Part shown: positions 19,978 through 63,898 of the stretch, piece by piece
Position numbering within the stretch: position 1 is the first letter of the stretch
Layout: every line of letters starts with the position of its first letter
NCBI GenBank assembly: GCA_965637545.1
Contig: OZ281494.1
Coordinates: forward strand, 1,674,001-1,738,000
Length of the DNA: 64,000 nt
Reading direction: 5' to 3'
Source of the DNA: Phallusia mammillata
Lineage: Eukaryota
Notes under the pieces: generated by a model
The model's input: the letters and a program-made list of their open reading frames with translations, nothing else
The model's database searches: none
What the model was told of the DNA's origin: nothing
Position numbers and translations under genes: made by a program

Positions 19978-22900
19978 ATGACTGGGCTTTCCATCAGCAA
20001 GTTTGTGATTTTGTTCCTGATGATTCACAATGTATACGGACAAACTAAACGTAAGTGTTACCACTAAAAGTGTTAATATTCGTTTGTTGGGCAATTTAAT
20101 TTTGCCAATTTTGCAATTAATTGTGCCAACTGTCCGAACTCAAGCCTGGTGTTGCGTTTAACAACTTATTAGACAAAACAATTGCAGAAAACAGTGCAAC
20201 AACGAGGTGTTTTCCAGGTTGCAACAAAACGATGCAAGCAGTGAAGGACAGTGTGCTGATATTATCTGACGATCTTGTGGATGCAAACACTGCACAGGAG
20301 AAATGTTCTTTGCTGGGTGGAAGTCTTGCAATGACTGATGACCCACAGATCAACACAACTCTCACTCAACTCATGACAGACAAATACACGAAAGGTTGGC
20401 ATATTGGTATACAATTTTAAGGCTCGGCAACAAAGTACAACAAAACGACTTAACTGCCTATCCCAACAAAACGTTGTTTCAGATTTGCAGCGGGTTTATA
20501 TTTTCTTTGACCCGGACACATATGAACGATGCAAATACTCATGTAGTTCGGCTGAAGTGGATTTCTGGAAAAGTACAAAATCTCTCGGACATCTGTGGTA
20601 TTTCGACTTGTACAAAACGTAAAAAGCAGATAATTATAAACTTTTCATGATCATTTGGATCAGCGGCTAAAATTTTTCAGTTATGTGTTCATAGCGGCCC
20701 GTTTCATCAACTCGAGAATTAGCGGTCTATAAAGTTGAATGTTAACCTTAGAAAACAAAAAATTAAAGCAAAATCACTACTATAAGGGTTAAAACCAGAT
20801 AGTTATAAACTTGTCACTATCAATTAACCTAAATTTTTTCGAACAGGAATCTCGAAAACGCGATGGAACCAATTTACTTCTGCGAGGCTTGGAAAGACAG
20901 GAATCCTGAAATGGAAAAGTGGTTTGTGTCTATTGGAAGAAATTGTGACGGACTTTTACCTCATGGAGATTGGGCCGGTTGGTTTTTATTACCTCAGTAA
21001 AGTTTGTTGGACCACAAAAATATATTATTGCCAAAACATATTATGTACAGTTTATGTTTTGGGTTTGTCAGGTTTTGATACAAAATCTTTTTTATTTAAT
21101 GTCTTGTATCTCACATACAAATATATGCGGGATGGAACCTACGATATTCCTTGTTTTTCGACGCTAAATCAAGGAAACGTCAACACGAAATATTCAGCTA
21201 CAGAAGCATCGGTGAAATGTATGGAAGCAAACTGCGAAGTGTCAATGAATCGTTTGAAAACTTTACTACATATGATGGATCATTCCTGGCACCAAGTGAG
21301 CGTTTGATCTTAAATAGTAATACATCTGCTCTCATGTCAAAAAGCATTTACCTTCTTTCTAGAAGTTAAAGTGTTTGTTGGAGCTCGTTACAACACGTCG
21401 TTGAATGGTTGGTATTGGAGCGATGGATCTCCGGCAAACTTTCCTGTTTCCAACGTCACATCTTGCCAGCAGGGAATGTTGCATTATGGGATCGGATGGA
21501 AGCAGTCAAGCATGAACTGTAGTGGTGAACCGGCTTACTATGCTTGTCAAGTGAAACGTGAGTGTTCTAATATGCATGAACTGAAACACAAAAGATTTCC
21601 TGGTGTAAAGAATATTAAAAATGCAGCTTTCAATCCTTTTTCAAATACTTTTGTCCATACCTAATGTACATCTTTTTCTGATGTGAAATGACTCAACAAG
21701 TGACAATGAATTGTAGTATAAGCACGTTTTGCAGTTAAGGATAAAAAAGTGTTTGTCTTATAAAAGTAACGAGCTAGTCGTTATATATATTTTTTAACGG
21801 AGTTGTTTTTTGCAGCCCTGTCATTCCTCCAACGATTCCGAAATAAGAATTTAGCAAATACTGGAGAAATCAAAAACATTGCAAAACAAATTGGAATATT
21901 TTCCCAAAATCATGCTGAAACCAACGGAACAACTTATGATTACGGAGAAGCTCAACTGTACATCGTTGTTACCAGCATCAACCAAGAGACATATAACTCG
22001 ACTATACAGCTGGGATCATCTAAGATTGACATCTCATTGCAGACAAACGGGGTTCAACGCATCGTTATTGATGTGTATGTCTTTCAGATAAACACAACCG
22101 AAACAGCACAGATTCAACCTCTCAAAGTCGGCTCCCTGACAACAACAAAGTATGAAGCTGCATTGAACACCACCTTTATTAATATTGTTGGTCGCAATGC
22201 AGATAGCTTTGAACCCATATCCAGCAACCATTCAACCAGCAACGAGGAAAACAATCATCTTCAAGGAAAAGCAAATTTCACCGTATCTCCAATGTCACTA
22301 GAATCCGTCTGCAAGAAAATCAAATTGGGAAAGATCAGCAATGCAAACCTTATTATCAACAAAATGAAACCAATTTGTCTCTACTTCGACAGAGTTGAAG
22401 ATAAGTATTCAGATCGTGGTTGCGCCACAATTACTGATGACGTAACAGGCAACGTCACTTGCAAATGCCACCATCTCACCTTGTTCACTGTTCTGCTGGC
22501 TGTCGAGACCACCACCATACCAAAGGGCATCAAGGTAAAGATTCAAATAAGTAATTTAAAGAATGGCTCACTATTAAGAAATATTTTATTTTAGAATGTA
22601 AAGTTTAAAGATTCAAATGTCATCTTAACAAACAGCACATGATTACGCAATATTTTATTTCAGATCACATCTTACGCCACAGAATCAACATCAGTCGTAT
22701 TTCTGATTGCCACCATAGTAATCCTATACAAATCGAAACAAAACATTGATCGGGTTCCGGTTCAAATCAGCTTGTCAATGGCTCTGCTACTCTTCCACGC
22801 AGTCAACCTATCCCATGATCTTGCCGTGATGCACGAGATTCCATGCGTGATTCACACAGCAGCCAATCAATATTTATTACTCTGTGCAGGTAAATAACTA

Positions 22901-23718
22901 ACCACATAATTCAACCCTTAAAAGATTTGTTTGTGATCGATTGAATCGTTTGTTTCAGGAATGTGGTCTCTGGTCGAAGGAATTCGTCTGTTTATGGCCA
23001 CTTCCTTTCCAGTCGAGTTTCAAACTCAGGATTCAACGAAACGTCTCAGGGTTTTTATGCTCACTGGCTGGCTTATTCCCGCTCTATTAGTGGGAATATC
23101 TACTACTGTGGGGTTTGTCATGGGAATCTACATGAAGCCCCAACCGCTAAACGAGCAGTGTAACCAATTGATACAGGTTCAAAAATACGACCGATGCTGG
23201 TTGGTGCCCGGTACTCCGATCTTCTACACAACGGTCATCGCTCCTCTTGCTCTTGTCCTCTTCATCAACCTGATCATTATCCTGAAGACAACACATGTGA
23301 TGCTGAACTCGAGACGGATGCGAAACGGAGGAGAAGATCCGGGGACAGGAGATGCATTAAGAGCATCAAAGTCTTTCATCTTACTCTTCCTCATGCTTGG
23401 TGGAACTTGGATTTTTGCTTTTTTCACAGGTAATAATTGTACATTGTGTGTTTCGAATTACTAACAAATTAATTACATCAATGTAAAGTTACATCAATAA
23501 ATGTTAAGCACCCTTTCTTTTCTGCAGGAATTGGCAACGAGATTTCGAACGAGGTGTTCATGTACATCCACAGCTTGGTTAACGGATCGCAGGGTATCGT
23601 CGTCTTTCTGTTGTATTGTGTCATTGATGATGACGTCAGAAAGGAAGTTTTACCGTGCAAGCGTGAAGCTGATGTTGGGTCTGATTCACAAGTAACAGGA
23701 CAAACTTTTAGGGGGTGA
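19978..23718 (+). CDS. Adhesion GPCR: signal peptide, split CTL-like module, GAIN/GPS, 7TM
   Basis: Phase-compatible exons 19978-20050 (MTGLSISKFVILFLMIHNVYG), 20218-20394, 20483-20618, 20847-20977, 21131-21295 (acceptor is GG, not AG), 21363-21557, 21816-22534 (GPS CLYF...GC...CKCHHLTLF), 22664-22889, 22959-23429 (MWSLVEG), 23528-23718 (NGSQGIVVFLLYC, TGA). Confidence 0.88.
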
Positions 23719-24743: not shown

Positions 24744-24789
24744 TCGCTAACGTTTCGCCCACCAGAACGGTAGGGCTTCATCAGAGCAA
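24744..24789 (-). ncRNA. Hammerhead ribozyme, intact core (mirror of 7203-7248)
   Basis: The plus strand reads GGGCTTCATCAGAGC, i.e. CUGAUGA on the minus strand. The copies at 27421-27466 and 32091-32136 read GGGCTTTATCAGAGC (mutant). Confidence 0.85.
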
Positions 24790-24916
24790 TGAACGATATA
24801 GTGCAAGCATAACAGGCGAAAATGCACAAGCGCAGCGGGATATAACGTAAAGTAATTATAAGAGAACAAAGGCTTATCGTGATGGGTTGAGTGTGCTATA
24901 TTGTGACAGTGCGTAA

Positions 24917-36685: not shown

Positions 36686-39600
36686 ATGATGGTGGTCAGA
36701 GCTTTGCCGTTTGTGTTTTTGTTGATCGTTCAATGCTCATCAACTGAAACAACAAGTAAAAGTTACTTTGTGGTGAAATACCGTAGAAACACTATTACAT
36801 GCTTAAATTGATTTGTCAGGTTGCGGAACGACCATGGAAGCAGAGAAAGACAGTGTTTTGATATTATCTGACGATCTTGTGGATGCAAACACTGCACAGG
36901 AGAAATGTTCTTTGCTGGGTGGAAATCTTGCAATGACTGATGACCCACAGATCAGCACAACTCTCTTTCAACTCATGACTGACAAATACACAACAGGTTT
37001 GCCAGGATGCAAAATAACACAGACTATGTTGTAACCATAGTTCGGCATAAATTTAGCTTTAAATCAACACGTTGCACGTCATTGTCGCAAATAGATTAGA
37101 GAGAAAGCAAGTAATCGTAACATTTTTAGATTTAGAGCGAGTTTATATTTATTACAATTCCACCGATCCTAAACGATACAAATACTCAAAGAATTCCACT
37201 GAAGTGGGTTGGACGAGCACAAAATCATTTGGACATCTGTGGTATTTCGACTTGTACAAAAGGTGAAAAATAAAAAACATACTTATTGATGTATATTAGT
37301 TATACAGACTTTTGTCCAACAGCAATCCTGGAATTCGTAGACAAAAAATTAACTTCTGCAATTATGAAAACAAGAGAGTCAATGACACAGAGAGGTGGAA
37401 TGTGACAATTGGAAGAGCTTGTCAGGTCCAAGGTTTGCGTTTCAAAGAGCTTAGTAACTACGAATACACTGTTGCAGCCAGGAATAATGTATCAACAAAA
37501 TTTTAGCTCTTCCGGCAGTTTTTGTTTTAATATGCCAACGTTTCGATGTCCCATACGAAACACCTTTATCAGGGTAATGACATAAATTGCAAACACAAGT
37601 TATTATAAAGCGAAAGAGCGACGAAACACACACACACAAATGGGCGGTGGTAAAAAAACGCAGTGCGCACCAATGGTCGAGTGATAACACCCAGCTCAAT
37701 GGTGCAAAAGCGACCGATATATTATCGGCATTAGAACGTCCGTTTTAACGTTCATCGTGTTGGTGTGAGAATGTATGTATGTTCCACGACTCCAGTAAAC
37801 CTCGCTTGTGAAAGTCAGTTTCTCTCGCTAACACCTGGGCAGCAGAGAATTTTATGGCGTGATTAAGGACAGTAGCATGTTGTGCCAATGCCGATTTTTA
37901 GCATATTTCTTAGCTATATCCCTTTCATGTTCTTTACGGCGCGTATTGAAAGACCTTCCCGTTTCGCCAATGTAAATCTCGTTGCACTGTTCACATGGGA
38001 TTGCGTACAATACACCCCCTTACCGCATTTGTATCAATGGAGTCTTAGGGGTGCGACAGCATCTGACGTAGGGTGTTGACTGGTTTAATCCCTACCGTAA
38101 CTACGGTCCACAACAAAATGATGGTGCCAAAATTTTATGTTAACTGTTCATATTGATACCTAAATTTACCTAAAAATAAACACACTACGGTCTGTAAAGT
38201 CTCCAACAACAACCAAAAAAATTCATAAATAGCAAAATGTTAATTAGACTGTTTTATTTAAACTGTGTAGATTTCCAATAAAACTACTATTGTGTTACTA
38301 TCTTGCTATTTATCCCGTTTTAACTAATACGTTCTTCCCTTTATCTTTATTACTGTAGTCAAACAAAAACGTTTCTACATAGGGTTGACCTGCAAGCAAA
38401 TTCGTATTGTTTTCAGGATGGCAATTCCAGTATTCCTTGTTTTCCGAAATTAACACCCTGGGGCAACAAAAACAAATATTTACCTATGGAAGATATACAT
38501 ATCCATATTCTAGCAAGTTGCGAGGTATCAATGAGCCGTATGAAACGTTTACCAAATACGAAGGATCGTTTCTGACACCAAGTGAGCGTTTGGTTTGAAA
38601 ACATACAAAGACAAAAATTTTTGATCTTGTAATTTATATTTTTAAATAACATTCGCAAATTTTGTTTAGACATTAACATTCTGCTTGGAGCTCGTTACAA
38701 CATGTCGTCGAATGGTTGGCATTGGAGCGGCGGATCTCCGGCAAACTTTTCTGTTTTCAACGTTACAACTTGCCAGCAGGGAGCGTTGCATTATGGGATC
38801 GGATGGGAGCAGTCAAGCATGAAATGCAGTGGGGAGACGGCTTACTACGCTTGCCAAGCTAAATGTAAGTAATTATAAAACAAATTTATTTAGGTCAGGT
38901 AAACATAGACATAAAATGATTCTCCTTATTTTTTAATTCGTTTTTGAACTCACTGATCCAAACAATACAATTTGTTTAAATTGCAGACTATGTTTCCTAA
39001 TATCTTTTGCGATTTCATTACTTGCTTTTTAATGATACAGTGCATGACTTTCTTGTGACGTTTCTTTAAATATTGCAGCTTTGAGTGATTTGTGTGTATA
39101 AAAAAATTACTGTGTAGGCATTTAACCTTTTTATCCACAATTAGTCAAGGCTCATGTGAAGAAATCTAAGTGCAACGCATCAACTGTGTTTGTCAGTTGG
39201 ACTGGACTTGATCAATTCATCACGAATAACAATCTTAATGCAAAGGTAATGTTTTATCACATCATTTTTTTGACATGTGTATACTATGTCTTTTTGCAAA
39301 TGTTGTATTTAGGTTGAAATTTATGTTTTGGAAATAAACAAGAGGATCTTAGCATCCTATGCAGATCAAAACACATTCGTTGAAAACGTTGGTTTTGAAA
39401 CAGAGTATACCATCACTGTAAGTAGTGTAAAAATATTCACTGAACAAGTTTTCATCCAATGAGATAATGGCTCTCAACTTGAATTTAAATTCAATTTATG
39501 TTGCTTGATGGCATAATTAAATTCGAGAGGCAACCAAACACTTTATTACCAAATGGTGTAACCAAAAATAAAACATACAATAACAGTTTACTTCCTCTTA

Positions 39601-42600
39601 ACTTTTTTTGTTCTGGAAGCCTTAAACAAATAACAAATTCAAACAAATTTGAAATTCACAGATCACTGCAATGCTTATGGGATGCATAAACGCCAAGGTC
39701 TCAACATCCAAATCAGTAACAACTTATGAAAATCCACCATCGAGTTGCTATCCTCCAGGTAAGCTAACGTGTTTATAATTATGGTGCACATGGTGTGTCT
39801 TAACTTATCTTTGTCTTTCTTAGTAAACACGACTGCAGAGACATTTCCATGCAACGCTTCAACTGTGCTTGTCAGTTGGACTGGACTTGATGAATTCATC
39901 AAATACAACGATCTAATTGCGCAGGTTTGAAAAGTTTGTGTTTTGTTGAATTGTTTTTGAATCCTATACACATGCAGGTTGTGGTTCAAGTCCATGGGTT
40001 ACACCAAACAATTTCTTTTCCGTATTCTGACAATTCGACAATAATAGAAGATCTCATTCACTCCACTTTGTATGAAATTCAGGTAATGAACCACTTTTAT
40101 TTTGTTCATTTTCAACATACACTTTATGTATTACCAAAAATCATAACATGACTTCAAAACAACCAAGACATGAACCATAATTTTATGTATCGCAGGTTAC
40201 AGTGATTGTCACCGGTTCAATCAATACAAACATCACATCCAATCTGACAGTAACAACTCCGGGTAATCCACCTCAAAGCTGCTATCCTGAAGGTAAAAAT
40301 AAACGTTAGCAGGTTGAAAGTTACACTGAAATTGAGGAAAACAAACTTAATGTAATCATTTTTTAGTGAATATAGTTTCCGAGAAACGAGATAAACTTTT
40401 GACAACCCGCCCATATTGTAAACCACAAACAGTAGAGTTTTCTTATTTGCATTGCAGTAAACATGTCTACAGAGACATTTCCATGCAACGCTTCAACTGT
40501 GCTTGTCAGTTGGACTGGACTTGATCAATTCATCAACAATAACAAACTTATTGCACAGGTGCAGATAAAATTTGTTTTGCTGCTGTCAAACATAACTTTG
40601 TTAAACTTTTCTTGCTAACATCAACATGTAGGTTGACATTCATGTCCAGGGTTTGAATCAAATCATCTTCGTCCCGTATTATGATAATTCTACAATAATA
40701 ACAGATGTCATTTCCTCTACTTCGTATGACATCATGGTAAGCACAGTTTTTATAATTTGGTGCGCCCAAACACACTAACAAAAGCAGTTTTTTGCTATCA
40801 GATGTGTGTGACAGTTACTGGTTCAATCAACACAAACATCACAACCAATACGACAGTAACAACTCCGGGTAACCCCTCACCACGTTGTTTACGAGATAAC
40901 ACGGTCAATCCTGCAACGAGTGTTGGAATGATTGCTGGTCTGGTGATCGGGCTGTTGCTTCTGTTACTTATCATTGTTGGGCTGGTCGTTATGATTAAAC
41001 GTCGAAATCACAGGTTTGTGTATAGTTGAGTTTTCGCCGTAGGAATGTACGTTGCAGCTTTTATAGATGCTATGGTTCGTCTCATATTGATATGACTGAT
41101 CGCGAATTCACTTTGTATCAATGTTATGACAAAGTACCATCGTGATTTCACATTTAACCGAAAGTTTTTCGAAAACCATTTCGAGCAAAAAGTCATTGTA
41201 CAAACATATAGTTTATTCCTACCTCTCAATCCTCATGATCCGAAATTCTGATACGATGCATTTAAGCAACTGAAATATAAATAAGGAGGCGATGGTTCAG
41301 GAGGGAAATGAGAAACAACACGTTACGCTTTTATTGCTTTTATAGAATCAGCAAAGGTCAATCTCCCCAAGTAAACATTTCTACCGAAGCAACCCACACA
41401 GGTAAGGTTTACAATCATCAGCTGGCTTACAATAAATAAGAATATATGCGTTGCAACAAAATATCCTCCTACCATACTTAACTGTTTAAACAGGAAAAAT
41501 GACATACGAAAACCTATCTCCTTCTGCTGGTGCACCCAGAAACTGTAAAGTCACCAAATTGTTTGATGTGTACAAGAAAAATGTTGAGTCAGAACTTTTC
41601 TTTGCAAACGAGTTTAGGGTAAGGGGTAAAACAATGGAAAAAATCTATATGCAAAGTCCAGTTAAACAAACTAGAGTTACCTAATACCTTGTCTTTCATT
41701 TGTTTTTGTTTCTATTTCCAGGGGATTAAAGAACAAAGCAAAAATAACCAGCGAACGAATGACGCGTCACAGTTGCCGCAAAATGCTGTGAAAAACCGCT
41801 ACAAGAATGTTTTCCCTTGTGAGTATTGAAACACGATATGCAAAGTAGTTTTATGAATGAGTTTATGGGATTGGATTTTTTACATTCATCAAAATCTCGG
41901 GCAAAAGGGTATTTTGTTGATTTAACTTGTGTTTGTTCAATAGACGATCATGCTCGAGTGGTTTTGCAAGGTAGCGGTGGAAACGATTACATCAACGCCG
42001 CTTATATACCGGGTTACGATAACGAGAGGAAGTTCATCGCCACTCAGGGTCCGAAGAAGGAGACAGTCAACGATTTCTGGTTGATGGTTTGGCAGGAAAA
42101 CTCCAACATCATCGTAATGCTAACTGGCTTGGTGGAAAACGGAAAGGTAATTCTTAGCTTTGAATTCTTCTTAAAAATGTGGGGTTTGAATGTATTCCAA
42201 GAAATAAAAAAAACGTTTATCCTTTTTTAACGTGTTTTGCATGCAGGCAAAGTGTGAACAGTATTGGCCTGACAATGAATCCGAAATTAAGTTGTTGTCG
42301 AATTTGAAAGTTCGAACACAACATGAAGTAACCTTCGGTGGCATCGTTCAACGACAGATCGTTTTATCCTCAACCAAGGTATGTGTCAACATAATAAAAA
42401 CGTAAATGTCCAACATATATTTGTCCCACACAAACGGTATCGTATAATGTTTTCCTGTAAAATCAAACCCGCTTGAGATTGGATAACAACAATAGCAGGC
42501 AGAAAGTTGCACAAGATATTTTTGAGTGTTTGTAGCATTAACAAAAACAAACCTACTTTTCTGACTACCTTGACTATAATTAGAGTTTTGTCATGCAAAA

Positions 42601-45104
42601 TTTCAGGAAGAAATTCAAAAACATGATCCCGCGTGTTTTATCCTTAGGAACAACGAACCATAACACAGTTGCAGTTTACAACTTGGCCCGATCATGGGAT
42701 TCCAGTAACTACATCCAACATGATCCACCTACGTAACATGGTCGATGATTTGCAAAACACAAATGCTCCGATCATTGTGCACTGCAGGTAAATAATTGAC
42801 ATACCCTGTGTTAGTTTGATCGACCAATAACCATATGTTTGGATGCAGCGCTGGAGTGGGACGTACAGGTACTTACATAGCGATGGACACTTTGTTTCAT
42901 GAACTTGACGACAAAGGAACAGTTGATGTTCCACGAACTGTTCTAAAAATGAGAGAAAATCGAACAGACATGATTCAAAATTCGGTAAACTGTTGTTGCA
43001 TGTTTTCTATCTCGACTAACAAATAGAAAAATTGGTTTTCAGTTACAATCCACGTTCGCTTCTCTTGTGGAGAGGATATGATGTAAATAAGTCCAGCAAC
43101 GCATTGTCAATCATGTCTATCTTATTAAATCTGTATTTCTACAGAATCAATACATGTACGTCTACAAGCTACTTGTGGAGCGTGAGAGTTCAATGGAAAC
43201 AGATAAAGATGTAACAGAACTACAACTGATGACTTCAAGTGAATTGTGAGCAGTTTGTAGTATAGTAACTCGAACCAAATCTGCAAGCTAGTATTTCTGT
43301 TGTTGTGATTCACACATTAGCCAATGATTTTTAACTTGTGTTACAGCCAGAAAACGCAAGACAAAGAATTTAAAGCATTGTTATCGTGGAGATTTGGCGA
43401 GGAATGGCAAGAAAATCACCCAGATCTGAGAACATGTAAATCAGTGATTCCCAACTTTATAGTGGTCGCTTCAAGGCTACGCGTCGTCAACGCGTACCAA
43501 CTGGCGAACTAATTTTGCACCAGATAGCAAGTTATATACGCAACCTGGTGTTTTAAGTAATAAACGTTTAATGTCAGAATAGGCGATTCGAGTGCAAAAA
43601 CACGAAATAAATAAAATACCTGAAGGTGACTGAAAATACTTCATTTGGTTATAACTTATACCCATTTTACAGACAAGAACACGGTGGTCAAACTTTGGGA
43701 CAATAAAAGCCAAAGCATTCAACACTTGGATGCTTCCTATATTCAGGTCAGAATTAAAGTTGCTTTCAAATTGGTTGAAGCTCATTCTTTTTCGCGAAGT
43801 GCCTGATTTATATTTAATACCGCCATCTTTTTTAAAATTGTTACTTCAACGTTTCTCCTTACAGGAGCATGGCTCTTCAGACCTTATCATCGCTGCGAGA
43901 AATCCTGCTCCAGGAGAAGAAGAAAACTTCTGGAAGATGATTGTTGAACGAGGAGCCTCACTTGTCGTTGATTTGGACAACAGCATTCAAGTAATTTTGA
44001 CATTTTGCATCTTCATGAAATAGCCGTACCCTCTACTTTATACCATACATCGTTTTCAGATTCTAACCAATGCGGCTTTGCAATATGAAGACATTTCGGT
44101 GTCTGTATGTGATGTGAATGAAAGCAACGTTCACAATCTCATAACTGTCGACGTCTGGTCAACAACCAACGCTTTTGTAAGTTGAAAACTACACTAACGT
44201 CATTTTAAGCAACCTAGTTGTTACGTTAAGTTTAACATTTTTCTATAATAAGGCACTATGGCCCTTTGTAAATACCGTGTTAGGTAGCAATGCTGATGGA
44301 AACTCATTATTACGTTTTTAGGCTGCACAGCAAGTGATGCTTCTGCAAGTCAAGGGATGGAGTGACGTGGAACGACCCCCGAAAGAAATGGATTTCATCA
44401 AAATTATCGAGGAAATGCAAAGGCAAAAGACCAAACAGAATTGTCAGTGTGTGTTGGTGGGATGCAGGTAAACAAATGAGTTTTCCTCATTAAGAAATTC
44501 CTATTGTAATTTAAATTCCGTCTCAAGTAACACGATGTAGCTTCAGCGCGTTTGGTTATGATTCACCATTTGTGCCATTCACTACTTTGCGCTTCATAAT
44601 GGTTCCACGTTGCGCAGCTATTTTCGGCTTGTTGATTGTTCTGTTCCATTGTGAAGTTGCATGTGTTTTTACCAACCGAAATAAACCCATATCCACTCAA
44701 ATCAATAGAACTTCCCAAAATGCATCTAAAATTAAGTAAACAACTTTATCATTACCAAACTGCTTTATTCCTAAAGTTACAAAACGCCGCAAACATCATA
44801 CGTTTACACACTGTTTATCACAGTAACGGATCGACAAGAACTGGAACCTTCATCGCTCTGGTGAACATTCTCGAACGTTTGAAGGCACAAAAGCGGGTGG
44901 ATGTATTCCGAACTGTGAAAGACCTGAGAGATATGAGACCGAATATGGTCGACAACAAGGTAATGTTTTACTTAAGACAAAGTGTTTATATAAATGGAAA
45001 TCATTTTAATTTAGTTTATGTGCTTACAGGAACTATACAAATACTGCTACTCGGTCGTCTTCGAATATCTGTCAAATTTTGACACGTATTCAAATTTCAA
45101 GTAA
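36686..45104 (+). CDS. Receptor-type protein tyrosine phosphatase: signal peptide, split CTL-like module, 3 FN3-like repeats, TM, PTP D1 + D2
   Basis: Signal exon 36686-36755. Lectin-module exons 36820-36996, 37130-37262, 37323-37432, 38417-38581, 38670-38864. FN3-like exons 39145-40890. [31 protein letters not shown]1 motifs [52 protein letters not shown]. Degenerate D2 ends ...FDTYSNFK*. The splicing near 43430-43865 was not resolved. Confidence 0.9.
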
Positions 45105-47421: not shown

Positions 47422-47477
47422 AGATCCTAAAAAGTGTATTTTAACTGTTTATGTAGAGCAAAATATGTCTTAGCCTA

Positions 47478-50068: not shown

Positions 50069-50560
50069 ATGCGACATATCTGGTATTGTGCGGTTGGAGT
50101 CGCATTCTTTTTGATCCTCTGTTGCTGTCAGGCGAAACCAAACGGTAAGTTTATTTTACTGTACGCTTTAAATGCGCAAACAAAATATCAGCCAAGGTAC
50201 CAATAATCTAACTATAAAACTATTAATATAAACTATAAACAGATACTTAGTTTGCTTTTATGTGACCTTTTTGTAACTGTTACGCCACTTAAGCAACTAA
50301 GTTTTGTTATTTTTAAAACTTTTGTGTTTGATTTTTAGTAAAAGCCTAAAATTCATCGTTGTGTTTATGTGACATAATTATAAATTAAGTACCGAGTTAA
50401 CTGATACGTTCTATTGCTACTTTTATACTTAAAAACAAGCTCACTGATATCCAACATTATCTAGTTAGTCTTATTTCCAGGTTGCTACACAGACAATGCA
50501 AGCAGTGAAAGACAGTGTGTTGATATTATCTGATGATCTGGTGGATGCAAACACTGCACA
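50069..50560 (+). pseudogene. Stub of a CTL-module gene: signal-peptide exon plus frameshifted, truncated lectin exon A
   Basis: 50069-50144 encodes MRHIWYCAVGVAFFLILCCCQAKPN with a phase-1 GTAAG donor. 50481-50560 matches exon A with a 1-nt insertion and breaks after DANTA. Confidence 0.8.
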
Positions 50561-51189
50561 CGATAATCAGAAAAAAATAATAGAATTCTTATGTGACAGT
50601 CAGCCTCACCCACACTGTAGAAGCGAGGCGCATCCGGGAGATTATGATCACTGTAGAAGTTCAGGCCTTATCTTGAACCAACATACCCCGGCATAATGCT
50701 TTATAGGATGGTCACGTTTCATCGTTGCAATAACAGCACAATACGCTTTGGGATTCTGATGAGTTTAGCATGGTCGAACTAATGTACTTTGCTACCATCT
50801 CTCTCACTGCTACCAATCTTCGGTGGAGTACTTTGCTCGAGTCTGATGGCGCACTACTAAGTGACGCTCTGCATTGAGTGTCTGGATTTCCCATACCAAC
50901 GATCTGTTTCAGTAGGCATGCTGTGAATCCTGCTTCGCCCAAAAGCTGATCTTTTTCTAAGGTTGCCTACACAAAGGTCCGAATACTTACTTCAATATGG
51001 GATTCTGTCTTAGCGCTACGCAGAATAGCGGCAACTCATATTTGAAAACATATTAAAGAATTTAAATAAGTTGAGCAACGTAACTATTTGGGCAGGTCAC
51101 AATTGAAAGATGGAGTTAAGAGGAAGTGCACTATCCTACTACATTGGTTTATTAGTTGCTTTAAGTCTTCACTAACGGAAATGCACTTT

Positions 51190-51380: not shown

Positions 51381-52955
51381 TATGTCCAGCCGGTAACGGG
51401 TCAAGCCTATTAGATTTCTTAAGTTTTGTCACGAAACAGAGTCCGTCCAGTTTTAACACAGGCGTTTATTACATACTGATGTTTTAACGAGACAAGTAAC
51501 ACTCGAAAATTGTTAGCTTTTAAGTAATGTTGCCAACCATATTTTAAAAGAAGTAGTTAAACAATTCAGGAAACAGTCAAGGATCGAGTAACATCTGACA
51601 TGTTCAGACTTGCTTTTGCGATTGTTTATTAAATGCTCATAAACAACGATTGATATACCAAACTTCATTACACCTGAACACACAATTGAGCAGTCAGCAC
51701 TTTTTTTTATCGGAAACCATGAACGCACAGCACATAAAGGGCTATTAAGTCGTAAAGTAGAAGAAACACTATATTTTTAGCTTCAATAAAGATTTAACAC
51801 TCACCAACACAATGCTTGCGCTAGATCACACCTAATTAAACGAGTCGGTAAACAGTGAAAGTCAATGTGAAAATCGTTAAAGATCAAACCACTTTCGTTT
51901 CTTAAGGTGAAACAGTTCGGTGTTTAAGGTCGCAATAGCTTCGCTTAATCTTTCCTAATTGTATAATTTGCTCTTTTCTGGCAGTATACTAAGTACTGAT
52001 GTAATGGTAAATTAAAATATGCACTGTTAACTTGGATACAAAGCGTTTTACTGTAAGATAAATGTGACACCAGATGTGTCAAAAAAACATTTTTTCACCC
52101 AGAATGTTTAATGCGATTCAGAGGCCTAATTTGAAGTTAATAACAATTTCCAGTTTTGTCATAGAGTTGCCATATGAGAATATTGTTGAGATGTTGAAGC
52201 TTTCTTAGCCTCTTCTGTGAAATATCACTTAATTAACCAGCCTTGAAGTAGTTTATCTTCGACAGAAAGTTTGTCACAGCGGTAATCACTTTGTTGAAGT
52301 TAGACAACGTAGAAGTTATACGATGATGATGCACGGATTTATGATACTTGTGTTCATGTTGCTTGTTCAATTACCATCAGCTCAACCAAATAGTAAGTTG
52401 TACTTTTCCCTAATACAGTGTCATGAATCTTTTTTCCTAGCCGTTCGGATAACTTAAAAAACGTGCGAGGACCCAGAGTTGTAAAGGAGCCTGAAAATCC
52501 GGTCCGAAACCGAGTCGTTTCGGAAAAGCACGGCCCGAAAGTTTGATTGACAGGCCTATACAATCAAGCCTCATGAAAGATCAAAACAACATACACAATA
52601 AACTATCATAGACAATTGGTCACGACGCAACTAGCTACTTAGCTAGTTAAATTTACACAAAATAATGATGGCACAGAGGGTAAAGTCAGGCCCGTATGTT
52701 AGGGAAAGACAAAAAAAAAACAAATTACAACGATCTGCAGGAAAAAAACTCACGTTTATAACATATAGCAATTAACACGTTTATAGCATATAGAAATTAA
52801 CTTTGCAACCATTGATGTCTAATACACTTTAACAACATTTATCGGAACAATTCAAACACTGTTGGGGCGATTAAAATGACGATGAGTGGGGCTGCAGTTT
52901 TTGACCGCGAACCTTTATAAGTCACACAAATACAATGCTATAAACTTGTTTTCAG

Positions 52956-55900
52956 GCTGCAACAAGACCATGCAAGCAGTAAACAACAATATATTGATAT
53001 TACCTGACGATCTTTTTGATGCAAACACTGCACAGAAGAAATGTTTTTTGCTTGGTGGAAATCTTGCAATGACTGATGACCCACAGATCAATACAACTCT
53101 CACTCAACTCATGACAGACAAATACACAACAGGTGTGAGTTGATGCAAGAGAATAACCTCAGCAACATTTACTATCCACATGTTACAACATCAATTTTGA
53201 AATCATGAAATATATTGTAGATCAGTGTTGGAAACGTGATCGTCAGTTTTTGTAGTCAACGTGGACGTTTCTGAAAAAATAATCTCATCTAAATAATGTA
53301 ATCATGAATTGTTTTAGATTTACAGCGAATCTATATCTTGTACCAAAGGAATAAAATTGATCACTACAAATACTCATATAATACGACTGAAGTGGGTTGG
53401 AAAAGCACAAAATCTCTCGGACATCTGTGGTATTTTGACTGATATAAGCGGTAACAGCTTTTAACTGATTCAAATTCGTAACCATGAAACAGTCGTTTTG
53501 TCCAACAGCAATCCTGAAAACATGGGTCAACCAATTTACTTCTGCAATTATGTAACAGGCACGAATTCGGAGAGGTGGTTTGTAACCATCGGAAGCTATT
53601 GTGGAGGTCCAGGTTTAGGCTCTACGTTTCTTAGTAACATTTTTAAGTTTAAACAAGCACACAAATTACAGAAACATTCAGGTCTATAAAAGCACCGAAA
53701 CAACATAATAAACCATAAATTTCCACACGACAGATATCATCTGTTTAATTAAATCATGTATATTTTAATTTTTTTCGTTGTTCATCATTCAGTTTTTACT
53801 TATACGTGTTATAATTTTCCTTAATTATAATTTTTATTAGCTAAGTTAAAAACAAATATTTTTACAAAGGATCAGGATGGAAATTTCGGTATTCCTTGTT
53901 TTCGGAAAACAACACAAGCAAACGTCAGAAACAAATGTTTAACTATAGAAGCGGAGGAATGATAGACATTACAAGCAAGTTGCGAGGTGTCAATGAATCG
54001 TTTGATAGATTCGATGTATATGAAGGATCGTTCCTGGCACCAGGTGAGTGTTTGGTCTTACAAACAACAAACGACAAGGTTGCATCAATAGTGTTTGCAG
54101 CTGTGTTTTAGATAATAACGTTTTCATTGGAGCTCGTTACAACACTTCGTTGCATGGTTGGTATTGGAGCGACGGATCTCAAGCAAACTTTCCCGTTTCC
54201 AACGTTACAACTTGCCAACAGGGAGCGTTGCATTATGGGATCGAATGGGAGCAGTCAAGCATGAACTGCAGTGGTGAAGTGGCTTACTACGCTTGCCAAG
54301 TACGATGTGAGTAATTAAATTTACAATACTTTTTTCCCTATTGGACTCTTACCCATATAATTTATTTTTTGTCAATGCTACTGTGGAGAAAATCATATGC
54401 AATGCTTCAACTGTGGTGGTCAGTTGGACTGGACTAGATCAGATCATCGAAGTCAATAATCTATTAGCAGAGGTAACACATAATTATACCACCAAGCCGA
54501 GCGTTTGGTGTTCTGCGGCGAAGTTTCCAACATTAAGATGCTTCGGCAATTGCGGTTGCTAAAAATCTTTCCTAGAAAGTTAGGTGCATGACCCTGCAAT
54601 AAACACATAGTTAGCGCTGTGAGCACTGGAGGGTGTTTCGCCTGTCTCGGTATTGGCTTTATTGATAGCAAAGCAGCATGGTGGCAGGAACTTGGCCGAA
54701 TGGCCTGGCGCGCCTGACCCATATACAGATATATAAAAAAATCCTGACCTGAATTCGTCCCCGGGAGTGTCCTGAGTTCGAACCCCGTGAAGTTGAAAAA
54801 AAAATGCAAAGCAGCATGGTGGTTTAATTTCATATTTGTCGCTTCAGTACCGAGTAAATCTATTAAATTGAGACTAAAGTCCAGCATGCAAGTTCTGCGG
54901 AAAAGGTTTGGCACAAGATGCTTCGACAATATGTGACATGTGAAGTGGCTACACCAATAGTTTTAATACCTTTTTAGGGTAGTTTTTGACAAATGTCGTT
55001 TTTAGGTTGAAATTTATGTTTCGAAACTGAACGAAAGAATCTTGGCACCATATTTAGATCTGTCGACAACGATTGGAAACTTAAATTTCGCAACAGAATA
55101 TAGTTTTGAGGTAACGTGTGTTTTATTGACAATAACGTTTTTTTATTTGCAATTGGTCAAGTTTGATTTAGTTGTCACATCGATGGCTGATTAAGTGTTG
55201 TTTTTGAGCTGCAACGTACTATTGTAATTTACTAAAAGATGGGAATATAACTGATACGAAAATAGTTTTAAAATGATTTGATCAAATTAGGTTTGGAAAA
55301 CATAAAACACTTGCATGGGAAGTCGATTAATTTTATCACACAAAATTCACCAACAGATCACTACAATGCTTACCGGATGCCTAAACGCTAACGTCTCAAC
55401 ATCCAAATCAGTGACAACTTTTGGAAATCCCCCATCGAGTTGCTATCCTCCACGTAAGCGAACAAGCTAGAAGTGGAATTTGAATTTAAATTCTTAACAA
55501 CTATTATTGCAGTAAATGCGACTGCAGAGACATTTCCATGCACGCTTCATCGGTGCTTGTCAGTTGGACTGGACTTGATCAATTCATCTACGAAAATGAT
55601 CCAATTGCACAGGTTTAAATCAAGTTTGCGTTAGTTAAACGACCATTCATAACGAAACTTCATGCAGGTCGAGATGAAAATTGAAGGTTTAAACGAAACA
55701 ATCTCTGTTCTGTATTTTGACGATTCCATTATATTAGAAGATCTTATTCACTCGACGTTCTATGAAATTCGGGTAAACAAATATTTTTTCGTGAGGTAAT
55801 TGTTCAAGAATAACATGCGGGGCACTGTGTGAATAAAAATCTACACTTTTTAAACATGACATTTTTTTACTTAAATTCTGTTTTTTAGGTCACAGCAATT

Positions 55901-57091
55901 GTCACTGGTTCAATCAACACAAACATCACATCCAATTTGACAGTAACAACTCCGGGTAACCCCCCTCAAAGCTGCTATCCAAAAGGTAAAAAGATATATT
56001 TTTGTTTTTCAGAACAGGCATTGTGGAAAACGATAGCAATAATAATTGTGAGAACTAGACTAAAATGTTTTATCAACCATGCACTAACATTAGACTTTCA
56101 TATTTTTGTAACGGCCTGTGAGCGCCCCTCGGTACTAAGCGCAGAACGTCACAAGAGGGGGCATTAAAACGTTTCTCCTAAAGGCTTTAAACAAACTCTA
56201 CTGTTGCAAATCTTGTTTGAGCGAGCAGGTTAAAATGTCCAAAAGGAGACGGTTTCGACATAAAAGCGCAAGAACACTGCATGAACGAATGCAACTCAGT
56301 CACCCTGACTAACTTAACTTCACGTGCATGGCAAATATTGCATAAGCGAACTTAGCGGCATGGCATATAGGGTCAACTTAGGAGACACGACCGATACAAC
56401 CGACGTAGCACCTCGCTACACGGAAGTCAGGAACAAAAAGAACTTAACCAAGATGCGTTGTTATTGTTACGTCAACGCAAAAGACATGTAATCAGAAAAA
56501 ACGGGAATTAATTAAAATCACTAATTACTGGCAAATAAGATGTAACATTTTTATGCTAGTAAACACTACTACAGAGACATTTCCATGCAACGTTTCACTG
56601 GTGCTTGTCAGTTGGACTGGACTTATTCAATTCATTAACGACAACAATCTGAGGGCGCAGGTTGAGATTCAAGTTAATGGTTTGAGTCAAACAATCTCTG
56701 TTCCTTATTTAGAAAATTCTGCGATAATAGAAGATCTTATTCACTCAACATTCTATAAAATTCAGGTGAAAAGTGTTTTGTTTTTCGTCGCAGTTAAAAT
56801 CTGTTGCACGACATGCTCTGTTTTGCGCCGTGATTTCCATCAGCAAACAACGTCACAAATTGATGTATTTTAGGTCACAGTCATATTTTGTATATTCCAG
56901 GTCACAGTGATAGTCACTGGTTCAATCAACACAAACATCACATCCAATCTCACAGTAACAACTCCGGGTAATCCCCCTACAAGATGTTTTCGTACAATTA
57001 ATGTTGGAATGATTGCAGGTCTGGTGATCGGGCTGTTGCTTCTGGTGCTTGTCATTGGTTGGCTGGTGGATATGTTTACACGAAGACAGAG
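52956..57091 (+). pseudogene. Decayed paralog of the receptor PTP ectodomain: CTL module + 3 FN3-like repeats + TM, no phosphatase domains
   Basis: Exons A-E at 52956-53132, 53318-53449, 53509-53612, 53876-54043, 54112-54306; FN3-like exons to 56990; TM at about 57000-57070. Lesions: 1-nt deletion and TGA in exon B, TG instead of AG acceptor at 54370-54371, 1-nt deletion near 55542. Confidence 0.85.
54685..54805 (+). mobile_element. tRNA-derived SINE in an intron
   Basis: A-box TGGCCGAATGG, B-box GAGTTCGAACC, A-rich tail, 17-bp TSD GCAAAGCAGCATGGTGG (54668-54684 and 54806-54822). Confidence 0.85.
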
Positions 57092-57955
57092 GTACAAAGT
57101 TTACAAATACAAAGTTTTACTGTTGTAATAAAATTATATTTTGGAAGTCTGGTTTTTAGTTGATAAGGCTTAATTGTAAACAGACCTGAAAAGTAATGCA
57201 GTGTATTAATACGTTACATGCAGCAATGCAGAAAACACATTTTGAGCAGCATTTGTGATATTTTTCAGGAAAAATCTGAATAAGCGAACTCAAAAGCAAA
57301 CAACACAAGCCCAGCTTCCACATAAAGGGTCTGAATGTAGGGAAATTTTCTCCGAGTAAAAATGTAGTGTATAAATCGAAGACGAATACGAAACAGTTAT
57401 AAAGTTAGAACAGACGGATCCAAACCCCACATATGAAATAATTATGTAATTTTGTTACTTCAAACTCGGTTTGACACCATTGTCATTTGACTTTTTATGC
57501 TGTCTGTCTTGTTTAGTTCACATCCTTCGTTTGTTTCCTTTCAACTGAATTTTTGGAAACGTTCGAACCGCAAACATTATTCGTATCTTTTGCATGAAAA
57601 CACTTTCAGATATTGACCCTGCTACGTCGTCTTTCATGTTGTGAAGCTGATAATGCGTGCCTTGGAGATCGTGAAGATGCTCGCTGATTGTTTGCAAAAA
57701 AAATCAATAAACAACACAAAAGAGCGAGACCACTTTAAAGACAAGATTTATTGCAACCGAACAGCAACAAAACAATGTTTCTAGAGTGAAACATCTTTAA
57801 ACAAAACTAAGATCTTGTAAAAAAAACATACGATTCACCAACTGCTATTGTCTACATGATTTTGCGTTTGGATTCAGATTAAGCTAGTTGCTGAGTACCC
57901 GGACTTTATATCATCAGACTGTTTTGGGAAACAAGTTTTAAAAGTTAGACTAGAC

Positions 57956-59111: not shown

Positions 59112-59215
59112 TTTTTTTTTTTCACAAGATTCGAACCCAGGACACTCCCGAATCCCGATGTGTTTTTTATCACTGTACATGGGCCAGGCGCGCCCGGCCA
59201 TTCGGCCAAGTTTGT
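59112..59215 (-). mobile_element. Second copy of the tRNA-derived SINE family
   Basis: The minus strand reads CTTGGCCGAATGGCCGGGCGCGCCTGGCCCAT...GGGAGTGTCCTGGGTTCGAATC followed by poly-A; homologous to 54685-54805. Confidence 0.8.
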
Positions 59216-60144: not shown

Positions 60145-60746
60145 CTTGTATACTTGTGTACTTGTGTACTAGTGTACTAGTGTACTCGTGTACTCGTGTA
60201 CTCGTGTACTCGTGTACTCGTGTACTCGTGTACTCGTGTACTCGTGTACTCGTGTACTCGTGTACTCGTGTACTCGTGTACTCGTGTACTCGTGTACTCG
60301 TGTACTCGTGTACTCGTGTACTCGTGTACTCGTGTACTCGTGTACTCGTGTACTCGTGTACTCGTGTACTCGTGTACTCGTGTACTCGTGTACTCGTGTA
60401 CTCGTGTACTCGTGTACTCGTGTACTCGTGTACTCGTGTACTCGTGTACTCGTGTACTCGTGTACTCGTGTACTCGTGTACTCGTGTACTCGTGTACTCG
60501 TGTACTCGTGTACTCGTGTACTCGTGTACTCGTGTACTCGTGTACTCGTGTACTCGTGTACTCGTGTACTCGTGTACTCGTGTACTCGTGTACTCGTGTA
60601 CTCGTGTACTCGTGTACTCGTGTACTCGTGTACTCGTGTACTCGTGTACTCGTGTACTCGTGTACTCGTGTACTCGTGTACTCGTGTACTCGTGTACTCG
60701 TGTACTCGTGTACTCGTGTACTCGTGTACTCGTGTACTCGTGTACT
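60145..60746 (+). repeat. 8-bp microsatellite (CTCGTGTA)n, about 70 perfect units plus 5 variant units
   Basis: Perfect array 60185-60744, preceded by CTTGTATA, CTTGTGTA x2, CTAGTGTA x2. Confidence 0.97.
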
Positions 60747-63080: not shown

Positions 63081-63898
63081 ATGATGACCAGAGGAGTGGC
63101 GATTGTGATGATTTTGATTGCTCAATGGTCATCAGCCCTGCCAAAAAGTAAGATGTTCTCTGCTAAAACAAAAGGTAGAAACACCATTATATTCTTCGCA
63201 ACTTGTTTATAAGGTTGCAACAAAACTTTTCAAGCAGTGAAGGACAGTGTGTTGATGTTATCTGATGATCTTGTGGATGCAAACACTGCACAGGAGATAT
63301 GTTCTTTGCTCGGTGGAAATCTTGCAATGACTGATGACCCACAGATCAACGCAACTCTCACTCAAATCATGACAGACAAATATACATCAGGTTTGAGTGT
63401 GCACTTAAAGAGTGGCAATTTTAACATTGCAGAAAAAAAGATGTGAAACAAAATTTACTTCACACATATTAACTTATTAACATCTGTAATAATTTCTAAA
63501 TCAGTTAAGTGTTGCACAACTCAAATCGATTATGTCGTTAAATTATTCGGCAATTGACCTGCAAAATTCGCATGTACACTAATCAATTGCTTGCTGTTTT
63601 AGAATTGCAGAGGGTTTATATTTTTTACGCAACAATAGAGAATGAACGATACAAATACTCAAAGAATCCGGCTGAGTTGGGCTGGACGAGCACAAAATCT
63701 CTGGGACATCTGTGGTATTTCGACTTGTATAAATGGTAACAAGTTTCAACAGAAACAAACTCGTTAGCATAAAATAATTCGTTTTGTTCAACAGTAATCC
63801 TAAAAACACGATACAAACAGTATACTTCTGCAATTATGTAAATGGCATGGACACCGAAAGATGGTTTGTGACCATCGGAACAAATTGTGAAGGCGGAG
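63081..63898 (+). CDS. 5' part of another CTL-module gene (continues beyond the window; C-terminal tail unknown)
   Basis: Intact phase-compatible exons 63081-63147 (signal peptide MMTRGVAIVMILIAQWSSALP), 63214-63390 (A), 63603-63735 (B), 63795-63898 (C). Confidence 0.85.

What the first reader, a model, noticed from the sequence alone, without database searches (positions are those of the whole stretch)
19978..63898. One lectin-like sensor module recently swapped between an adhesion GPCR and a receptor tyrosine phosphatase: candidate mix-and-match receptor cluster
Seen in sequence: the same five-exon ectodomain module (A-E) follows a signal-peptide exon in the adhesion GPCR (20218-21557 and its mirror), the receptor PTP (36820-38864), a phosphatase-less paralog (52956-54306) and the gene starting at 63081, with stubs at 17509 and 50481. 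Exon A is 177 nt and exon E 195 nt in each complete copy. GPCR and PTP exon A share a run of about 65 identical nucleotides. Both module borders are phase-1 introns. Established knowledge: phase 1-1 modules are the classic substrate for exon shuffling, and aGPCRs and R-PTPs are unrelated signalling families. Inference: a similar ligand would be routed to G-protein signalling or to tyrosine dephosphorylation, like paired activating/inhibitory receptors in immune or self/non-self recognition. The many pseudogenes fit birth-and-death evolution.
Basis: partly seen in the sequence, partly recalled or inferred. Interest (0 to 1): 0.88.

Follow-up and report, generated by a model that had tools for sequence, protein, structure and literature searches.

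The report
Lectin-like module shared by GPCR and phosphatase
In a sea-squirt gene cluster, the same five-exon lectin-like outer module sits on a tyrosine-phosphatase receptor, on phosphatase-less relatives and on one adhesion GPCR. This is a real case of exon shuffling, but it is not shown to be recent, and the GPCR copy is not shown to be expressed or working.

Summary
A signal exon followed by exons A-E (A 177 nt, E 195 nt, phase-1 borders) occurs in four genes:
- an adhesion GPCR (GPS and 7tm_2 confirmed);
- an intact 30-exon, 1208-aa tandem-domain receptor phosphatase;
- a phosphatase-less copy;
- a gene that runs off the window.

Two stubs are also present.

Four points qualify the reading.
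- **Mirror GPCR.** It lies in a 100% identical inverted copy that abuts an N gap. Its read depth equals the unique spacer, so it is probably a false duplication.
- **GPCR splice sites.** The GPCR has lost the family's exon C donor (AT) and exon D acceptor (GG, confirmed in two DNA runs). Several in-frame alternatives exist. No RNA contig covered it.
- **Phosphatase-less copy.** It is a pseudogene, with a stop, a frameshift and a lost acceptor.
- **Age of the sharing.** All copies are about equally distant (overall dS 0.43-0.53). Exons A and E have low dS (0.18-0.42) in every pair. Their cores occur at roughly 130-600 times single-copy depth in the DNA runs. The 66-nt identical run therefore reflects family-wide homogenisation, not a recent GPCR-phosphatase swap.

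Exon E is the C-terminal half of an NK-receptor-like C-type lectin-like domain.

The scan had already found the lectin-FN3-phosphatase/short-tail family elsewhere in this genome. The GPCR tail is the new element. The paired-receptor logic is untested.

The parts
19978..20050 (+). Adhesion GPCR gene, signal-peptide exon (73 nt, ends in phase 1)
   Evidence: ATG, hydrophobic 24 aa and a GTAAGT donor
20218..20394 (+). GPCR exon A, N-terminal half of the C-type lectin-like domain (177 nt, phase 1-1)
20483..20618 (+). GPCR exon B, first insert exon (136 nt, phase 1 to 2)
20847..20996 (+). GPCR exon C. The family donor position (20969) reads AT. Possible donors lie after 20977 (phase 1) or 20996 (phase 2).
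21131..21295 (+). GPCR exon D. The reading frame is open and conserved, but the acceptor is GG instead of AG. Phase-2 acceptors lie inside it at 21173, 21197 and 21203.
   Evidence: DNA contigs confirm the letters
21363..21557 (+). GPCR exon E, C-terminal half of the C-type lectin-like domain (195 nt, phase 1-1)
21816..22534 (+). GPCR GAIN/GPS exon with the CxC..HL|T cleavage motif; no start codon of its own
   Evidence: Pfam GPS E=5e-8; PDB hits to the ADGRF1/D1/L3 GPS region
22664..23718 (+). GPCR seven-transmembrane exons (22664-22889, 22959-23429, 23528-23718 including the stop)
   Evidence: 7tm_2 E=5e-17; ADGRG6; 67% identical to a Phallusia mammillata ADGRD1-like protein; splice model
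36686..38864 (+). Receptor phosphatase gene: signal exon 36686-36755, A 36820-36996, B 37130-37262, C 37323-37432, D 38417-38581, E 38670-38864
39145..41013 (+). Phosphatase gene: three units of two FN3-like exons plus a Thr/Asn-rich linker exon, then the transmembrane exon 40802-41013
   Evidence: the fn3 match is only weak
41346..45104 (+). Phosphatase gene: juxtamembrane exon, catalytic domain D1 (WPD loop and [10 protein letters not shown] present) and domain D2, 15 exons to the stop
   Evidence: Y_phosphatase E=7e-27, 9e-11, 2e-10; PTPRS/E/A/LAR in PDB; model
52323..57125 (+). Third gene with the same module, FN3-like units and TM but no phosphatase. It is a pseudogene: TGA in exon B (53318-53450), acceptor TG at the first FN3-like exon (about 54370), and a 1-nt deletion in the exon near 55540.
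63081..63898 (+). Fourth gene: signal exon 63081-63147, A 63214-63390, B 63603-63735, C 63795-63898. Its tail lies beyond the window.
17508..18095 (+). Decayed tandem duplicate of the GPCR: an exon E fragment (17508-17637), an alignable intron and a GAIN-exon fragment, interrupted by a high-copy repeat
   Evidence: (I14-I16)
50069..50566 (+). Truncated family member: signal exon 50069-50144 and the first half of exon A (50481-50566), which then runs into unrelated sequence. RNA contigs of run X4 show the 50144-to-50481 splice.
   Evidence: (loose ends at 20232 and 20296)
8274..12014 (-). Mirror copy of the GPCR gene inside the inverted arm 1-13725; probably a false duplication of the assembly

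Best explanation
The window holds part of a large, fast-turning-over sea-squirt receptor family (earlier notes name Phallusia mammillata). Its outer end is a signal peptide plus an NK-receptor-like C-type lectin-like domain (exons A and E) split by a three-exon insert (B-D). Most members continue with FN3-like/Thr-rich stalk units and a transmembrane helix, then either two tyrosine-phosphatase domains or a short tail. Here one adhesion GPCR body (GAIN/GPS plus 7TM) carries the same module. The most economical origin is a single illegitimate or unequal recombination in the phase-1 intron after exon E. This joined the 5' part of a lectin-receptor gene to the 3' part of a neighbouring same-strand adhesion GPCR. 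That fusion was later duplicated in tandem, giving stub17. The event is lineage-specific but not recent, and it was not a swap with the neighbouring phosphatase gene. The strong nucleotide identity of exons A and E is family-wide homogenisation or conservation. Inferred, not shown: the module binds an unknown ligand, more likely a protein or complex surface than a simple calcium-dependent sugar. In the phosphatase this would alter clustering and so dephosphorylation. In the GPCR, pulling on the cleaved GAIN domain would expose the tethered agonist. Whether the GPCR copy still works is open, because two of its module splice sites are damaged.
For: Module homology and exon sizes and phases. Intact 1208-aa, 30-exon phosphatase gene with all GT-AG introns. 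GPS, 7tm_2 and Y_phosphatase; PDB relatives. A 15-sequence exon E profile hits 35 C-type lectin-like chains among 36 PDB matches, best CD94 and NKG2D at E=6.5e-4 to 3e-3, over their C-terminal halves. A Lectin_C protein (P0014) is among the exon E hits. Equidistant copies, with dS low in A and E and high in B-D for every pair. Depth of about 275,000 at exon A and 60,000-104,000 at exon E against a baseline of about 455. Exon E, the intron and the GAIN exon are bridged by 412-nt contigs without mismatch in two DNA runs. Stub17 repeats the exon E-intron-GAIN order at 76-86% identity. In contigs from other samples, exon E relatives (39-56% aa identity) are followed in at least three read-through ORFs by FN3-like exons; no GAIN or 7TM match turned up in any of the 13 loci. 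All genes lie on the + strand.
Against: No RNA contig covers the GPCR exons, and the phosphatase gene was not tested with reads. The GPCR lacks the family's exon C donor and exon D acceptor. Homology of the GPCR signal exon to the other signal exons is not demonstrable, so a two-breakpoint insertion of A-E into an existing GPCR cannot be excluded. Flanking introns give no breakpoint. The exon A profile has no significant PDB match, and Pfam Lectin_C does not hit either half alone. The copy-number estimate rests on summed contig depth, which the tool warns is not a copy number.
Confidence: 0.7

Rival explanations
1. The lectin-GPCR chimera is a dead or dying by-product of rearrangement in an unstable cluster. 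It is a pseudogene that still has open exons, not a working receptor.
For: The family exon C donor is AT and the exon D acceptor is GG, fixed in two DNA runs. No RNA contig lies on any GPCR exon in the two RNA-like runs laid, and 12 runs of the species hold 0-2% of its words. Its neighbours stub17, stub50 and the third gene are broken.
Against: All ten exons are open. At least four in-frame splice alternatives give 773-820 aa. The HL|T site and the TM6/TM7 hallmark motifs are intact. Module dN/dS for GPCR pairs (0.41-0.50) is no higher than for other pairs (0.32-0.51), and GPCR exon A has the fewest private changes, 4 against 9-11. The available RNA runs are small and, judging by their dates and sizes, probably embryonic (not verified).
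Confidence: 0.4
2. One reading: a recent gene-conversion or exon swap specifically between the GPCR and the neighbouring phosphatase gene created the 66-nt identical run.
For: The longest identical run, 66 nt, is about twice that of other pairs (31-38 nt). The concordant run of 9 polymorphic sites gives p=0.026.
Against: That p-value is about 0.16 after correction for six pairs. Exon A dS for GPCR-PTP is 0.23, against 0.18 for GPCR-fourth and PTP-third. GPCR exon A is closer overall to the fourth gene, 91.5% against 89.8%. Exons B-D differ at dS 0.68-0.94. With hundreds of near-identical exon A cores in the genome, the true donor need not be in this window.
Confidence: 0.15
3. The junction between exon E and the GAIN exon is an assembly error in a region that is visibly misassembled.
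For: A perfect palindrome abuts an N gap, with its inner boundary (18267) inside a repeat of depth 10^5. There are also perfect 4,670-nt tandem copies.
Against: Short-read contigs of two runs cover 20871-21400 and 21534-21945 with no mismatch. They span exons C and D and the start of E, and the end of E, the intron and the GAIN exon. Stub17 shows the same exon order independently.
Confidence: 0.03

Closest known systems
Amphioxus adhesion GPCRs with Lectin C-type domains in the N-terminus (Nordstrom et al. 2008, PMC2246102)
   Same: An adhesion GPCR (GPS plus 7TM) carries a C-type lectin-like domain acquired by lineage-specific domain shuffling in an invertebrate chordate.
   Different: Here the lectin-like domain is split by a roughly 135-145 aa three-exon insert. 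It is a close paralogue (84-91% nt in exon A) of modules on neighbouring non-GPCR receptors. The Ciona survey (PMC2396169) listed LRR or EGF repeats for three of its 24 unclassified adhesion GPCR models and only a GPS domain for the other 21.
Lectin-FN3 receptor family of this same genome with a tandem-phosphatase or short tyrosine tail (earlier scan notes s1-375385, s1-392393, s1-355916, s1-394850, s1-351711)
   Same: Same split lectin-like module, same FN3-like stalk, same alternative of phosphatase or no phosphatase, and the same mixture of intact and broken copies. The phosphatase gene, third gene and fourth gene here are members.
   Different: None of those notes reports the module on an adhesion GPCR. 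That third kind of body is what this window adds.
NK-cell C-type lectin-like receptors (CD94, NKG2D, KLRB1) and their ascidian relatives (Botryllus and Ciona CD94-like; PMC2247398, PMC5465252)
   Same: These are the best structural-sequence relatives of exon E. The domain is compact, no EPN/QPD or WND calcium-sugar motif was seen by eye, and the genes sit in a fast-evolving cluster.
   Different: NK receptors are type II proteins with short tails that signal through ITIMs or adaptor chains. Here the domain is N-terminal on type I or 7TM proteins, is split by an insert, and is wired directly to a phosphatase or a GPCR.
Classical tandem-domain receptor tyrosine phosphatases (PTPRA/E, LAR/PTPRS)
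   Same: Signal peptide, single TM, an active-looking D1 ([13 protein letters not shown]) and a D2; closest PDB chains are PTPRS, PTPRE, LAR and PTPRA.
   Different: The ectodomain is a split lectin-like module plus FN3-like/Thr-rich units. I found no paper describing such an ectodomain on a phosphatase. From memory only, and unverified, a lectin-type receptor phosphatase class was named in the sea-urchin phosphatome.

Membership tests
Adhesion GPCR | GPS motif with the HL|T/S autoproteolysis site just before TM1 | tested here: met
   Pfam GPS E=5.1e-8, 33.8 bits against a cutoff of 22.5. CxC..HHL|T is followed by a hydrophobic tethered peptide. PDB GPS regions of ADGRF1, ADGRD1 and ADGRL3 match.
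Adhesion GPCR | Family B2 seven-transmembrane domain | tested here: met
   7tm_2 E=5.2e-17 on one exon. ADGRG6 is the only PDB hit. 67% identity to a Phallusia mammillata protein named ADGRD1-like. Seven hydrophobic segments are visible in the model.
Adhesion GPCR | Complete GAIN fold | tested here: inconclusive
   The single-sequence AlphaFold model had mean pLDDT 32 and was unusable. No homologues were found to build an alignment.
Classical receptor protein tyrosine phosphatase | Y_phosphatase domain(s) with a WPD loop and C(X)5R after a single TM | tested here: met
   Y_phosphatase E=6.6e-27, 9.1e-11 and 2e-10 on D1 and D2 exons. WPDHG and [10 protein letters not shown] are in D1 and CSNGSTR in D2 of the 1208-aa model.
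C-type lectin-like domain (CTLD) | Sequence match to the CTLD family over the whole domain | tested here: inconclusive
   The C-terminal half (exon E profile) hits 35 CTLD chains of 36 PDB matches, best E=6.5e-4. The N-terminal half (exon A profile) has no significant hit. Pfam Lectin_C hits neither half alone. The spliced domain could not be submitted because it has no reference.
C-type lectin (calcium-dependent sugar binder) | EPN/QPD and WND calcium and sugar ligand motifs in the long loop | tested here: not met
   By inspection of the exon E translations in all copies. The loop region is short, as in CD94 and NKG2D. So the domain is lectin-like, not a demonstrated lectin.
Fibronectin type III domain | Significant match to fn3 or an FN3 fold | tested here: inconclusive
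   fn3 is the only Pfam family matched, at E=0.15 and 12.7 bits against a cutoff of 25. There was no PDB sequence hit. The model had pLDDT 50.
Exon-shuffled 1-1 module | Module bounded by introns of the same phase (1-1) and found in otherwise unrelated genes | tested here: met
   The signal exon ends in phase 1, and exons A and E are 1-1 in all copies. The GAIN exon and the first FN3-like exon both start in phase 1.
Paired activating/inhibitory receptor system | Near-identical ectodomains binding the same ligand, opposite signalling outputs, co-expression in the same cells | not testable with these tools
   Ectodomain amino-acid identity between GPCR and PTP ranges from about 40-47% over exons C and D to 85-88% in exon A. 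No ligand, expression or signalling data are available.

The most novel reading that the evidence does not exclude
The split lectin-like module is the common sensor of a three-output recognition system of ascidians. The outputs are G-protein signalling through a cleavable adhesion GPCR, tyrosine dephosphorylation through a tandem phosphatase, and tyrosine-motif tails. All are encoded in one rapidly evolving complex and used together, for example by blood cells, for self/non-self or microbe recognition. This would be a chordate analogue of the NK gene complex built on different signalling hardware.
Probability: 0.1. Interest if true: 0.8.

Novelty: new variant of a known kind. Interest (0 to 1): 0.42.

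Why it matters
The case shows in sequence detail how a phase-1-bounded extracellular module moved between two unrelated receptor superfamilies inside one gene cluster. It adds an adhesion GPCR to a large, unstudied sea-squirt family of lectin-like receptors that was so far seen only with phosphatase or short tails. If the GPCR copy is expressed, one binding module could be compared across different signalling outputs in the closest invertebrate relatives of vertebrates. If it is not expressed, the locus still documents the raw material and failure rate of exon shuffling: one intact gene, one doubtful chimera and three wrecks in 45 kb.

Tried and rejected
- **Pfam on single exons.** Exons A, B, D and E gave no Lectin_C match.
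- **Exon A profile against PDB.** Only chance hits.
- **HMMER search of 1.84 billion representatives with exon E.** It gave only 15 hits. The 13 significant module relatives are genomic ORF fragments of 72-228 aa, so there was no full-length protein to fold or to read tails from.
- **Ten contig places from six look-ups** (13 loci in all). They showed tandem module copies but no phosphatase, GAIN or 7TM match.
- **GAIN exon homologue search.** Nothing found.
- **Structure prediction.** Models of the GAIN exon and of the one intron-less FN3-like unit had pLDDT 32 and 50 and were unusable, so no fold search was run.
- **PDB sequence search with the FN3-like unit.** Nothing found.
- **The spliced A+E or A-E module.** It could not be folded or scanned because it has no contiguous reference, and I did not type it in.
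- **RNA evidence.** No run holds the GPCR as RNA. Reads were laid on the GPCR and the palindrome boundary, so the phosphatase gene has no read evidence.
- **Literature.** Three strict searches returned nothing. Broader ones gave the amphioxus, Ciona and tunicate immunity papers but nothing on lectin-type receptor phosphatases in ascidians.
- **Signal exon homology.** I rejected a homology claim for the GPCR signal exon, because its alignment score to the PTP signal exon (35) was below that of an unrelated region (39).
Full report
**What the window is.** It is eukaryotic DNA of about 39% GC. Earlier notes of this scan name the genome a sea squirt, Phallusia mammillata. In agreement, the GPCR's 7TM exon is 67% identical to a UniRef protein of Phallusia mammillata named ADGRD1-like.

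**Observation.**
- Repeat finding, BLAST and local alignments recover the claimed module copies at the stated places.
- I built splice models by hand with a simple donor/acceptor score.
- The phosphatase gene (36686-45104) is a clean 30-exon model. Every intron is GT-AG and there is no stop. It encodes 1208 aa, in this order:
  - signal peptide;
  - exons A-E;
  - three units of two FN3-like exons plus a Thr/Asn-rich linker exon;
  - a transmembrane helix;
  - phosphatase domain D1, with WPD and [10 protein letters not shown];
  - domain D2.
- Pfam confirms Y_phosphatase on D1 and D2 exons. The nearest solved chains are PTPRS, PTPRE, LAR and PTPRA.
- The GPCR gene (19978-23718) has a signal exon, A-E, a 719-nt exon with the GPS motif (Pfam E=5e-8) and three 7TM exons (7tm_2 E=5e-17).
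- The GAIN exon starts in phase 1 and has no ATG or signal peptide of its own. It must therefore be spliced to something upstream, and exon E, 258 nt away and also phase 1, is the obvious partner.
- Exon A is 177 nt and exon E 195 nt in all complete copies. All five signal exons (67-76 nt) end in phase 1.
- The identical run between GPCR and PTP exon A is 66 nt.

**Four corrections.**
1. **The mirror.**
   - It is one arm of a perfect 13,725-nt inverted repeat. The repeat ends exactly at a 200-N gap.
   - Further perfect matches continue the inverted duplication to 36141.
   - In two DNA runs, contig depth inside the arm (455-471 and 222-238) equals depth in the unique spacer (451 and 219.5).
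   - The inner boundary at 18267 lies in a repeat with depth above 10^5.
   - The second GPCR copy is therefore probably an assembly duplication.
2. **GPCR splice sites.**
   - The GPCR cannot be spliced like its relatives.
   - The donor the other three copies use after exon C (AG|GTT) reads AG|ATT in the GPCR. The exon D acceptor reads GG instead of AG.
   - Contigs of both DNA runs cover 20871-21400 (X1) and 20871-21262 (X2) without a mismatch, so these are real letters.
   - In-frame ways out exist. Donor GCCG|GTTGGT (phase 1) joined directly to exon E gives 773 aa. Donor CA|GTAAAG (phase 2) joined to acceptors inside exon D gives 810-820 aa. Skipping B-D altogether gives 683 aa. Nothing shows which, if any, is used.
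3. **The third gene.** It is a pseudogene, with TGA in exon B, TG in place of an acceptor, and a 1-nt deletion in an FN3-like exon. No phosphatase remnant follows it.
4. **The stubs.**
   - Stub17 is a decayed tandem duplicate of the GPCR's exon E, intron and GAIN start, at 76-86% identity.
   - Stub50 has its own signal exon (50069-50144) and half of exon A.
   - The loose ends of two RNA contigs of run X4 match 50130-50144 exactly and the sequence after 50566 with one change. That truncated gene, or a twin of it, is therefore transcribed and spliced from the signal exon to exon A.

**What the module is.**
- A profile of exon E was built from three window copies and twelve relatives found among 1.84 billion proteins.
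- It matches 36 PDB sequences at E up to 10, and 35 of them are C-type lectin-like domains. CD94, NKG2D and KLRB1 lead, at E=6.5e-4 to 9e-3, and the matches cover their C-terminal halves.
- One of the weaker database hits, P0014, is a bona fide Lectin_C protein.
- Exon A could not be placed by sequence. Its pattern of hydrophobic residues and the conserved Cys and GG..LA motif looks to me like the first half of such a domain. That is an inference.
- I saw no EPN/QPD or WND motif. The module is lectin-like, not a shown lectin.
- Exons B-D lie between the two halves. Earlier notes (s1-394850, s1-380843, s1-351711) describe this insert as a nested beta-rich module. I did not test that.

**Is the sharing recent?**
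- NG86 estimates on codon alignments give overall dS of 0.43-0.53 for all six pairs. The GPCR is no closer to the phosphatase gene than the FN3-type genes are to each other.
- Within every pair, exons A and E have dS 0.18-0.42, and exons B-D 0.57-1.09. GPCR exon A is closest to the fourth gene, at 91.5%.
- A GENECONV-style permutation gives p=0.026 for the GPCR-PTP run, which does not survive correction for six pairs.
- Summed contig depth is about 275,000 at 20323 and 60,000-104,000 in exon E, against a baseline of about 455. Depth falls to about 10,000-13,500 over exon B and about 1,100-2,600 over C and D.
- With the tool's warning that depth is not copy number, this still says the cores of exons A and E exist in very many near-identical copies. 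It fits family-wide homogenisation, as note s1-394850 also concluded, rather than a private swap.
- Relatives in contigs from other samples are 39-56% identical in exon E. They stand in tandem arrays. In at least three read-through ORFs they are followed by FN3-like exons. No GAIN, 7TM or phosphatase match turned up within the flanks held.
- The lectin-FN3 plan is thus older than the GPCR fusion, which I found only here.

**Origin and mechanism.**
- All genes are on the + strand. The simplest path is one recombination in the phase-1 intron after exon E, joining the 5' part of a lectin receptor gene to the GAIN-7TM part of an adhesion GPCR.
- Insertion of A-E alone by two breakpoints remains possible, because the GPCR signal exon is not demonstrably homologous to the others.
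- The functional reading is inference from the families: ligand binding by the module, clustering control of the phosphatase, and tethered-agonist exposure in the GPCR. There is no expression, ligand or signalling evidence.

**Comparison and novelty.**
- Adhesion GPCRs with Lectin C-type domains are described in amphioxus (PMC2246102).
- The Ciona survey listed only GPS, LRR or EGF domains for its 24 unclassified adhesion GPCR models (PMC2396169).
- CD94-like lectin receptors are known in Botryllus and Ciona (PMC2247398, PMC5465252).
- The lectin-FN3-phosphatase/short-tail family was already noted by this scan at several other places in this genome.
- The new element is a third kind of body, an adhesion GPCR, on the same split module in the same cluster. 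This is a new variant of known domain shuffling.
- Interest is moderate. It would rise if the GPCR proves to be expressed.

Noticed in passing
window 1-13725 and 18267-31991 (further perfect matches continue the inverted copy to 36141): A perfect inverted duplication whose left arm ends at the N gap 13726-13925. Its inner boundary lies in a very high-copy repeat. Read depth in the arm equals that of the unique spacer, so this is probably a false duplication in the assembly.
   Followed up: partly
window 26799-31468 and 31469-36138: Two 100% identical tandem copies of a 4,670-nt unit, holding no family exons. They may be a real very recent duplication or another assembly artefact.
   Followed up: no
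window 17990-18589: A short element with summed contig depth of 10^5 or more in DNA runs, also present in RNA contigs. It is inserted in the GAIN-exon fragment of stub17 and looks like a MITE-like high-copy repeat.
   Followed up: no
window 50069-50700: A truncated family member is apparently transcribed. RNA contigs of run X4 join the signal exon end (50144) to exon A (50481) and read on into the unrelated sequence after 50566.
   Followed up: partly
window 56559-56768: In the third gene's last FN3-like unit, the two exons that are split elsewhere are contiguous. This looks like intron loss, or gene conversion from a processed copy.
   Followed up: no
window 39171-39247, 39850-39926, 40484-40560, 54397-54474, 55541-55615, 56586-56663: All six copies of the first FN3-like exon share an invariant run of about 20 nt (GTCAGTTGGACTGGACT), so nucleotide-level homogenisation also occurs outside the lectin-like exons.
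   Followed up: no
window 59992-60750: A tandem array of an 8-nt unit about 750 nt long (at least 76 register shifts reported).
   Followed up: no
window 47027-47446: A tandem array of a 70-nt unit, about six copies at 79-100% identity.
   Followed up: no
L001, L006-L013 (ENA ERZ27241785/86/89/99; JGI 3300001463, 3300001689, 3300001539, 3300027611; Logan SRR5247211): Contigs filed as metagenome assemblies carry tandem copies of the split lectin-like module at 39-56% amino-acid identity in exon E. This is presumably host DNA of other sea squirts in those samples.
   Followed up: partly
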